A DNA stretch of 64,000 nt from Blastocystis sp. Blastoise. Taxonomy: Eukaryota; Protista; Bigyra: Opalinata. Shown here piece after piece: positions 19,361 through 22,877 of this stretch. Each line of letters begins with the position of its first letter. The first letter of the stretch is position 1. Below the pieces are notes generated by a model that ran no database searches, was not told the DNA's origin, and worked only from the letters and a program-made list of their open reading frames with translations. The position numbers were made by a program, and so were the translations under genes. The DNA lies in NCBI GenBank assembly GCA_039096225.1, contig JBBPEB010000002.1:1178001-1242000 (forward strand), read 5' to 3'.

Positions 19361-22300
19361 ATGGCAACTGTTACACCTACAGATCCAGAACCTGTCATGA
19401 TTGATGAAAGCAAAGCTGAGAGCTCGTAAGTTATAAATAATATTTCTATATTCTCGTATAGTCATATCATCGATCCAGAACAACGAATGAGCACTGTATG
19501 CTTTATTTAGAATTTGTTATCTATTTTTTTAGAACCATATTCATATATCGTCAAGAATGAGGTATATATATATTTTGCTTTGGAGTCTATGAATTCATTA
19601 TCTAGTTCTTCTATAAAGCCTCGTAATTCTGCACTTAGTTTTATTGGTGATGATTCCCTACATCAAGATAAAGATCCTGTGAGAGTTATTGAAATGATTC
19701 GTCAACAAACTAGTCGTGGTGAAATTGAAGCTATCAAAGGAAAAACACTCACATTTGTTGGAAGTATATTTTATATATTTATACGTTTTTTTGTTCTATA
19801 TACATTATTTTGTTCTATATACGTTATTTTGTTCTATATACGTTATTTTGTTCTATATATGTATATGTATATATAGTTCCTAAGGTTCCTCGTTGGTATA
19901 AATCGCCTATGAATTGGATTTTGATTATTGGCTCTATTCTTTCTTTCGTTCTTCTCTTTTGTCCTCTCGTTGAAGGTCAACCTTCTGTTCAATATACTGC
20001 TGCTCTTATTCTATTTATGGGTATATATAGCGAAATAGTTATTATTATTATTATGATATGATTATATTATATATATATAATCATATATTTGAATGCGATT
20101 TTATTATCTATATATATATATATATATATATATATATATATATGTATATCTATCTATATGGCTACCTTATGGGTTACAGAGGCTCTTCCTATGTCTATTA
20201 CTGCTCTGATTCCCGTGATTTATTGCCCTATCTTCGGAATTATGTCGGCTGAAGTTATTTCTCAACAATATTTTAATAATATTATATATATATATTCTCT
20301 ATTTTATCATTATTATTATTTAAAAAGTATTTATTATATACATGTTATAACTGCTATATATATATATATAATTATATATTATATATACTCTACTATCCTA
20401 TTCCCGTAGTTATTTTCATGTTTCTCAGCGGATTCATCATTTCCCTCGCTTTGGAACACTGGAACCTTCACATTCGAATCGCTCTCTTTATTACCAAGCT
20501 TTTCTCGTATATATATATATATGTTATGGTTATTACTCTTATACTATATATTAATCATAGTTATTCTATATATATATTGATAGTACTATTATTATTATCG
20601 GTATTATATATATATATATATAGAAAGCCCCAAACGATATTATTTGGTATTATGTTCGCTTCGTGGTTCTTATCTATCTGGCTATCCAATACGGCTGTAT
20701 ATCTATATCTTATATATATATATATATATATATATATATATATATATATATATATATATATATATATATATATATATATATATATATATATATATATATA
20801 TATATATATATATAAATATATCTTTATATATATTTATCTTTATATATATCTTTATATATATTTATCTCTCTCACTTTATATATATATATATATAGCTGCT
20901 GCATTGATGATGTATACCAATGCGAGTGCATTAGTAATAGCTCTAGAGCAACAGTTGGGAAAGAGAAAAATGCAAGGATTCTCCAAGGCGTGCATGCTAG
21001 GCATTGCGTATATATATATATATTAATTTATTTAATTTACTATTTTTATTTATATGGTTATATATATATATAGATTACTTTAATTTACTATTTTTATTTA
21101 TAAGGTTATATATATATATATGTATATATAGTTTCTCCTGTAGTATCGGTGGTCTTCCTTCAATTATATCATCACCTCCAAATATGATTATGCTCAAATT
21201 ATATCAATCTACATTCGCAAATTATGATGTTCCCACAATTACTTTTGTGAACTGGTTATTAGCTACTCTCCCTATTGCTATAATACTTCTTGTATTGGAA
21301 TGGGTCACATTTGTATTTATATACTGTCCTCCTTCTGCAAACCTCAAGATCGATGCTTCTTATGCTAAAAATGAGTATATATATATATATATTAATTTTT
21401 ATTTTTTATTTTTATTTTTATTTCCATAAGTAGGCTATATATATGACTATCATCAATTACAATTATATAACTATATATATATATGTATATATAGATATAA
21501 GAAGTTAGGTAAGGCTAGTTATGAGGAATGGGTTGTAGGTATTATGTTTATATTAGCAGCTCTCCTGTGGTTATTCCGATCGGATATGGCCTTTGGAGAC
21601 TTCACTATATATGGTATATATATATTATATACTATATACTATATACTATATATATATGTTTTATTATATGTTATATGTTATTATGTATAGGTTGGGCAAA
21701 TCTCTTTGGTAATCCTTCATATATTACTGATGGTACTTGTGGTATATATATATATATTATATATTATAATTATTATCATTAATATATAGGTATGTTTATT
21801 GCTCTCTTACTCTTTGTTATTCCCACCAAAAAATTTATGACCGGTAAAAATGGTCCTGATGATGATAGTATATATATATATATAAATATATAATATATAT
21901 ATAATATATATATAATATATATATAATAATAAATTATATAACTATGTATATATAAAATTCGTTATGACTTGGGAAACTGCTAAGAAATTACCGTGGGATT
22001 TAGTGCTTTTATTTGGCGGTGGTTTCGCTTTAGCTGAGGCTGTTACTGTAAGTGGTTTTGGTAATTATTTAGGATCTCTTCTTTCTGGTATAGGCCAATG
22101 GCCACTAGTATATATATATATATATATAGTTATATATATATAATGATGAATAATATTATAAACTTATTATGTTGCTAGTTTATTATTATCTATATGAATT
22201 CTTTGTAATATTCTCACATAACCTTTTTCTTATTCATGTTTTTATTTCTTCTATTTCTATTATTTCTATTATTTTTATTATTTCTTGTATTTCTTGTATT

Positions 22301-22877
22301 TCTTCTATTTCTATCTATTATTATCTTATCCTATCTTATCCTTTCTTCCTTCTCTCTTCACCCTATCCTCTCTATCTTCTCTCCATCCCTAGAAGTCGCT
22401 GTCTCTGTTATGTCCATTGTCGTCTGTTTCATCACATCCTTCACTTCTGGTAATACTACTACTTCTTCTATTGTCTCTCCTATTGCAGTAGGAATGGCTA
22501 TTGGGTCGTAAATATATACATATTATTATTATTATTATTATTATTATTATTAATATAAATAACAATAGAATATACTTATACTATTATGATTACCATATAT
22601 ATATATATATAGCCATATTCATCCTTTAACTTTATTATATCCTGTTACTCTATGTATATCTTGTGCCTTCCTTATGCCTATTGCTTCTCCTCCTAATCTT
22701 ATTGTCTTTACTTCAGGAAGAATCACAGTTATGGATATGTTCAAATCAGGTCTAATTATCACATTATTCGCGGTAATCGTCATTTTACTCTGCTCATTCT
22801 TTATTGCTCCTGCTGTTTTTGGCTATGATTACCGCGTTTATCCATCATTAAAAAATGTAACTAGTATCGCCTTTTAA
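19361..22877 (+). CDS. SLC13/DASS divalent anion:Na+ symporter (~16 exons)
   Basis: Motifs [97 protein letters not shown]. Five introns need non-canonical ends (see findings). Confidence 0.93.

What the first reader, a model, noticed from the sequence alone, without database searches (positions are those of the whole stretch)
20021..22392. Five non-canonical introns in one otherwise intact SLC13 gene; the deviant bases copy the spliced mRNA
Seen: keeping DASS motifs at consensus spacing needs 20021-20161 GT..GG (ILFM|ATLWVTE; AT..AC giving MGILW is an alternative), 20282-20409 TT..AG (YFNNI|IFMFLSG), 20695-20895 CT..AG or GT..CT (SNTAAALMM), 21868-21955 GT..AA (no AG in the intron, retention hits TAA) and 22108-22391 GT..TA or TA..AG (QWPL|EVAV). 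All keep the local intron look (xTATATAT starts, mostly TATATxx ends) and the coding sequence has no other lesions. In at least four cases the odd base(s) equal what the neighbouring exon supplies across the junction, creating short direct repeats (TATGG, TTAT, GCTG, CTAG). Inference, three options: (a) a spliceosome tolerant at terminal dinucleotides when junction repeats exist; (b) cDNA/mRNA-templated conversion eroding intron ends; (c) assembly polishing with RNA-seq reads overwriting the boundaries. (a) or (b) would be a new system; (c) is a serious and perhaps the likeliest alternative.
Basis: partly seen in the sequence, partly recalled or inferred. Interest (0 to 1): 0.8.

Follow-up and report, generated by a model that had tools for sequence, protein, structure and literature searches.

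The report
Intron ends overwritten by mRNA letters
In a tortoise-gut Blastocystis genome assembly, five introns of an ordinary transporter gene lack the usual GT/AG ends, and each wrong letter is the one the spliced mRNA has there, which most likely means RNA reads overwrote the assembly during polishing rather than that the organism splices in a new way.

Summary
Observation confirmed. The window is from Blastocystis sp. Blastoise (Rus-B). The gene is SLC13/DASS WA158_003662, with 15 introns, five of them non-canonical. The annotated protein matches my spliced model at all five junctions. All five are old introns, GT..AG at the same codon and phase in human-subtype orthologues. All five deviant ends copy the mRNA (chance about 0.001-0.01). 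They have no U12 motifs, and U1, U5 and U6 are canonical. I found seven further candidates in 264 kb, and other first readers noted the same rule across this genome (unchecked). Best reading (about 0.82): RNA-seq reads ending a few bases past a junction overwrote intron ends during short-read polishing. Copied stretches are at most 7 nt, in register, and one or two end-of-read edits from consensus. This is not proven. The paper states DNA for Polypolish and does not say which reads POLCA used. The same paper's NandII assembly is unaltered at the orthologue. Real cDNA conversion plus a tolerant spliceosome remains possible (about 0.10).

The parts
19361..22877 (+). SLC13/DASS sodium:dicarboxylate/sulfate symporter gene WA158_003662, 617 aa, 16 exons, 15 introns
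   Evidence: PF00939 hit; P0015 100% identical to model; exact spliced map
20021..20161 (+). Intron 5, GT..GG. Acceptor -2 reads G, as the upstream exon end does (TATGG on both)
   Evidence: GT..AG at aa 144 phase 1 in JDR, NandII, NMH, DL
20282..20409 (+). Intron 6, TT..AG. Donor +1 reads T, as the next exon start does (TTAT)
   Evidence: GT..AG at aa 184 phase 1 in all orthologues mapped
20695..20895 (+). Intron 8, CT..AG. Donor starts CTG like the next exon. Either consensus GTATAT with +1 and +3 changed, or rare GTG with +1 changed
   Evidence: GT..AG at aa 240 phase 1 in JDR and NandII
21868..21955 (+). Intron 13, GT..AA. Acceptor -1 reads A, as the upstream exon end does
   Evidence: GT..AG at aa 441 phase 1 in orthologues
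22108..22391 (+). Intron 14, GT..TA. Acceptor ends CTA like the upstream exon; equals an AG acceptor that lost its G before the next exon's G
   Evidence: GT..AG at aa 492 phase 0 in orthologues
21375..21494 (+). Intron 10, canonical control: its donor resembles the next exon start (6 tolerated overhang lengths) yet is unchanged
9688..9785 (-). Further candidate in the window: AT..AG intron whose first base equals the next exon's first base; next to an A run, de novo call only

Best explanation
Assembly artefact. In the cell these are ordinary GT..AG major-spliceosome introns. [quoted passage not shown] A read that ends a few bases beyond a junction is kept unclipped with one mismatch, or a one-base gap, against the intron end. 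Where such reads outvoted reads carrying the intron, the polisher replaced the intron base with the mRNA base. Shown: the copy rule, the short in-register tracts, ancestral canonical introns, canonical snRNAs, and a pipeline with four short-read polishing rounds. Inferred: that RNA reads entered one or more of those rounds for this strain.
For: All five deviant ends equal the mRNA. Restoring GT/AG leaves each site one tolerated end-of-read edit from the observed state, or two for site 3 if its donor was GTATAT (aligner scores from my own knowledge of BWA-MEM defaults). The orthologous introns are canonical in ST1 and ST3. No exon copy of 8 nt or more flush with an intron end in 264 kb; the longest copy seen is 7 nt. 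Single-site candidates in genes of middling or low codon bias have 3-10 tolerated overhang lengths, while events with only 1-2 occur in SLC13 and acetyl-CoA synthetase, ranked 9 and 4 of 72 by codon bias (small, post hoc). U1 5' end, U6 ACAGAGA and U5 loop 1 are canonical. [quoted passage not shown]
Against: The Methods state Illumina DNA for the three Polypolish rounds. The same paper's NandII assembly is identical to the independent 2017 NandII assembly across the orthologue and about 8.7 kb, and NMH versus DL shows no convincing broken splice site in 22 kb, so the effect is not pipeline-wide there. The RPL13a intron in the window is canonical. Site 3 needs two rounds or a rare GTG donor (2 of 511). 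Within the gene, changed boundaries are only weakly more alignable than unchanged ones (p = 0.08). There is no significant contig-orientation bias (7 left, 5 right).
Confidence: 0.82

Rival explanations
1. Real genomic change: cDNA- or mRNA-templated repair overwrites a few bases of intron ends in expressed genes, and the major spliceosome still removes these introns exactly.
For: It predicts the same copy rule and a link to expression. A multi-base tract such as CTG at site 3 comes in one step. The paralogue on C18 has only N-terminal introns and an intronless core, the pattern expected of cDNA-mediated intron loss. The Methods name DNA for Polypolish. Canonical snRNA sequence does not exclude tolerance: Fritillaria changed U2AF and snRNA methylation instead (10.1101/2025.08.15.670264).
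Against: Tracts stop at 7 nt or less, the scale of an unclipped read overhang. It requires tolerance of five unrelated dinucleotides at both ends while about 97% of introns keep a very strict GTATAT..TATAG consensus. ST1 has only GT-AG (98.3%), GC-AG, GA-AG and U12 classes (PMC5608401).
Confidence: 0.1
2. Point mutations at intron ends persist because a tolerant spliceosome uses junction repeats to place the cut; no templating is involved.
For: Short repeats exist at four of five junctions.
Against: Site 4 has a one-base match only. At the other sites part of the repeat is created by the change itself. 70 canonical introns with similar junction likeness are unchanged. Site 3 would need two independent mutations or a rare donor.
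Confidence: 0.03
3. Residual nanopore errors unrelated to RNA, left where DNA short reads map poorly beside TA repeats.
For: R9 reads and TA-rich introns. Site 5 is equally a one-base loss in a GG.
Against: Random errors would not all equal the mRNA base (p 0.001-0.01) or cluster five in one gene. It can explain site 5 alone.
Confidence: 0.05

Closest known systems
Blastocystis GT-AG major introns (PMC5608401)
   Same: Same positions and phases as GT..AG introns in ST1 and ST3 orthologues; interior motifs match this genome's GTATAT..TATAG consensus.
   Different: One terminal dinucleotide per intron departs in this assembly, always towards the mRNA letter.
U12-type (minor) introns, present in Blastocystis (PMC5608401) and tolerant of odd ends in Physarum (10.1101/2020.10.12.336362, listed, not read)
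   Same: Non-GT-AG ends. This genome has a U6atac gene and a sub-threshold U12 match, and likely true AT-AC introns in the window.
   Different: None of the five has an ATATCCTT-type donor or a CCTTAAC-type branch site.
Blastocystis GA-AG introns (0.16% in ST1, PMC5608401)
   Same: A real non-canonical donor class spliced by the major spliceosome in this genus.
   Different: None of the five is GA-AG. One outside candidate (C15:924752-924820) is GA-AG and may belong here.
Fritillaria non-canonical introns (10.1101/2025.08.15.670264)
   Same: The major spliceosome can evolve to accept non-GT/AG ends.
   Different: There 95% of introns are non-canonical with duplicated U2AF. Here they are a few per cent, with ends set by the neighbouring exon.
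Reverse-transcriptase template-switch false introns with direct repeats (own knowledge)
   Same: Non-canonical ends with short direct repeats.
   Different: Those are false introns in cDNA. These introns are real and ancestral; it is the genomic letters that are in doubt.

Membership tests
SLC13/DASS transporter | PF00939 match and intact motifs | tested here: met
U2-type GT-AG intron | Orthologous intron GT..AG at the same codon and phase | tested here: met
   all five in JDR and both NandII assemblies, four in NMH and DL
U2-type GT-AG intron | GT and AG in this assembly | tested here: not met
U2-type GT-AG intron | GT and AG in the organism's DNA | not testable with these tools
U12-type intron | RTATCCTT donor and CCTTAAC-like branch site | tested here: not met
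GA-AG intron class | GA donor with AG acceptor | tested here: not met
RNA-read polishing artefact | Deviant bases equal the mRNA across the junction | tested here: met
RNA-read polishing artefact | Change reachable by unclipped end-of-read edits; short tracts only | tested here: met
   site 3 needs two rounds or a GTG donor, site 5 one gap
RNA-read polishing artefact | Left/right bias expected from Polypolish end trimming (PMC8812927) | tested here: inconclusive
   7 left, 5 right; all three one-overhang events are on the left, p = 0.16
RNA-read polishing artefact | Seen in sister assemblies of the same pipeline | tested here: not met
   one 22-kb locus only
RNA-read polishing artefact | RNA reads documented as polishing input | tested here: inconclusive
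   DNA stated for Polypolish, unstated for POLCA; preprint version 1 and code not readable
Tolerant major spliceosome | Altered U1 5' end, U6 ACAGAGA or U5 loop 1 | tested here: not met
Tolerant major spliceosome | Divergent Prp8 or U2AF | not tested

The most novel reading that the evidence does not exclude
The bases are real: in this lineage mRNA- or cDNA-templated repair erodes intron ends by a few bases (partial intron loss caught in the act), and a major spliceosome with canonical snRNAs still splices TT, CT, GG, AA and TA ends exactly.
Probability: 0.12. Interest if true: 0.88.

Novelty: not a real feature. Interest (0 to 1): 0.2.

Why it matters
If it is an artefact, the public Blastoise assembly carries false non-canonical splice sites at a few per cent of introns, mainly in well-expressed genes. 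That would mislead intron surveys, and it would explain a whole group of this scan's notes on this genome in one step. The mRNA-copy rule is a simple diagnostic for RNA-polished assemblies. If the bases are real, they would be an intermediate of cDNA-mediated intron loss and a new limit on what the spliceosome needs at intron ends.

Tried and rejected
The joined spliced model was built only inside scripts and never sent to a search tool; searches used single exons, the paralogue's open frame, or database ids. No second copy or haplotig of the gene exists in the assembly. No Rus-S or Hermann's orthologue appeared among protein hits, and a JGI metagenome scan gave only a 45% match. More genome could not be fetched after 200 kb, so the survey covers 264 kb. 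No excess junction microhomology among 511 canonical introns; that set is biased against altered sites, and it missed the RPT2 case. The de novo gene finder misplaced three of the five known junctions, so its candidates are leads only. AT..AC at site 1, U12 and GA-AG classes, and distant canonical sites were rejected. A literature search found no paper describing this artefact. The big protein search was not needed.

Full report
Source. The window is G000:C15:1178001-1242000 of a 33.3-Mb, 34-contig assembly. Its SLC13 proteins are named 'Blastocystis sp. Blastoise' (WA158) in NCBI. Size, GC and the 1,322,594-nt contig match strain Rus-B of Lind et al. 2025 (PMC12129017: 33.3 Mb, N50 1323 kb, 23.1% GC). 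That paper describes R9 nanopore reads, four racon rounds, three Polypolish rounds with Illumina DNA, and one POLCA round with 'short reads'. Rus-B alone was sequenced on a MiSeq, from a xenic culture. Its data statement lists assemblies and RNA-seq only.

Observation. Using them gives an open frame that aligns to a paralogue with an intronless core without gaps at these junctions, and no GT/GC..AG placement within 45 nt does as well. The annotated protein WA158_003662 is identical to my model over 521 aa. The paper says its gene models favour RNA-supported introns, so the mRNA very probably uses these junctions; I did not see the reads. An exact spliced map gives 15 introns, 10 of them canonical.

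The introns are old and were canonical. Orthologues from ST1 (JDR, two NandII assemblies) and ST3 (NMH, DL) have GT..AG introns at the same codon and phase: aa 144, 184, 240 and 441 in phase 1, and aa 492 in phase 0 (aa 240 is absent in ST3). These are therefore neither new insertions nor false introns.

The copy rule. At all five sites the deviant letters are those of the mRNA across the junction. For the four substituted dinucleotide bases the chance is 0.012 at one in three each, or 0.0009 with real exon-flank frequencies. A gene finder trained on 264 kb of this contig called about 615 introns, with a strict GTATAT..TATAG consensus and 2-4% non-canonical calls, many of them noise or U12 introns. 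Seven further copy-type candidates came out of it: two in the ADP-forming acetyl-CoA synthetase gene, one canonical acceptor in the proteasome ATPase RPT2 gene that repeats the last 7 nt of its exon (none of 511 other acceptors ends AAAAG), and four single sites. I chose these partly because they copy the mRNA, so they are not independent statistics. The gene names here are my recognition of motifs. Other first readers list the same rule on many other pieces of this genome; those notes are unchecked.

Known classes excluded. None of the five has a U12 donor or branch site, although the genome has U6atac and the window holds two likely AT-AC U12 introns. None is GA-AG, the rare class known from ST1 (PMC5608401). 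The U1 5' end, U6 ACAGAGA box and U5 loop 1 are canonical. That lowers a changed spliceosome without excluding it, because Fritillaria changed proteins and RNA methylation instead.

Mechanism, most likely. An unspliced aligner keeps a read end unclipped if it costs less than the clipping penalty; with BWA-MEM defaults that allows one mismatch, or a one-base gap followed by three matches (own knowledge). RNA reads ending just beyond a junction then vote for the mRNA letter on the first intron bases. Restoring GT/AG and counting tolerated overhang lengths gives 5, 5, 2, 1 and 1 for the five sites. Sites 1, 2 and 4 are one substitution. Site 5 is one lost G, which could also be a nanopore error. 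Site 3 is one substitution from a rare GTG donor or two from the consensus donor. Copied tracts never exceed 7 nt and stay in register. Events with 1-2 tolerated lengths occur only in two genes of high codon bias; single events in other genes have 3-10. This is suggestive only, with few cases.

What does not fit or was not shown. The Methods name DNA for Polypolish. The same paper's NandII assembly equals the independent 2017 assembly across the orthologue, and NMH versus DL shows nothing convincing, so any artefact is specific to Rus-B or to better-expressed genes. The RPL13a intron is intact, and so is the most alignable donor in this gene (21375). Both need retained-intron or DNA reads to have outvoted the overhangs, which I could not measure. 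Polypolish trims alignment ends on one side (PMC8812927), which predicts a contig-side bias. I found 7 left and 5 right, with all three one-overhang events on the left (p = 0.16); one extra right-side change at +4 of an acetyl-CoA synthetase donor was left out of that tally and would not fit trimming. The paralogue's intronless core shows that cDNA-type intron loss may have acted in this lineage, which keeps the biological rival alive.

The decisive test was not run. The run search found only RNA holders (X1 0.60, X2 0.27; seven DNA runs at 0.05-0.06 were not examined and are probably TA-repeat matches). The joined spliced model was used only in scripts and the joined search step was left out.

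Verdict. The pattern is real in the assembly and is not chance. It is most likely an RNA-read polishing artefact (0.82), with plain nanopore error explaining part (0.05) and real biology about 0.13. Interest 0.2; 0.88 if DNA reads confirm the bases.

Noticed in passing
window 62673-62744 and about 62808-62909, minus strand: Two neighbouring likely U12 AT-AC introns (donors ATATCCTT and ATATCATT, branch-like site before AC) in a gene with zinc-finger-like motifs. The genome has U6atac at C21:544821-544937, about 6.6 kb from U6, and a sub-threshold U12 match at C24:844725-844868.
   Followed up: partly
L019:5569-5745 and L019:5871-5969 (C15:965569-965969): ADP-forming acetyl-CoA synthetase gene: two 3'-half introns with mRNA-copy ends (GT..AT with a GTAG donor, and GT..GG).
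   Followed up: partly
C15:1060016-about 1060140, minus strand (L029): RPT2 intron whose canonical acceptor repeats the last 7 nt of the upstream exon; possibly an overwrite hidden behind an intact AG.
   Followed up: partly
C15:933909-934024, plus strand (L016): GA..AG intron that does not copy the next exon; probably a genuine member of the Blastocystis GA-AG class.
   Followed up: no
L001:1483-3021 (C18): SLC13 paralogue WA158_004514 with introns only in its N-terminal part and an intronless 538-aa core, against 15 introns in the window's gene: 3'-biased intron loss or a retrocopy.
   Followed up: partly
L008:1501-1654: U1 keeps the canonical 5' end although about 61% of donors are GTATAT, which pairs with it poorly at +4 to +6.
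   Followed up: no
window 5356-6033, minus strand: Ribosomal protein L13a gene with one canonical intron. The tRNA-Thr gene at 3324-3396 and tRNA-Gln gene at 18684-18756 lie on the plus strand.
   Followed up: partly
L033-L037: Eleven intron positions of this gene (ten within the aligned transporter core or near it) appear shared between the tortoise isolate and ST1/ST3 despite 28-34 nt versus 36-284 nt intron lengths; the two NandII assemblies differ by haplotype-like SNP blocks outside the gene.
   Followed up: no
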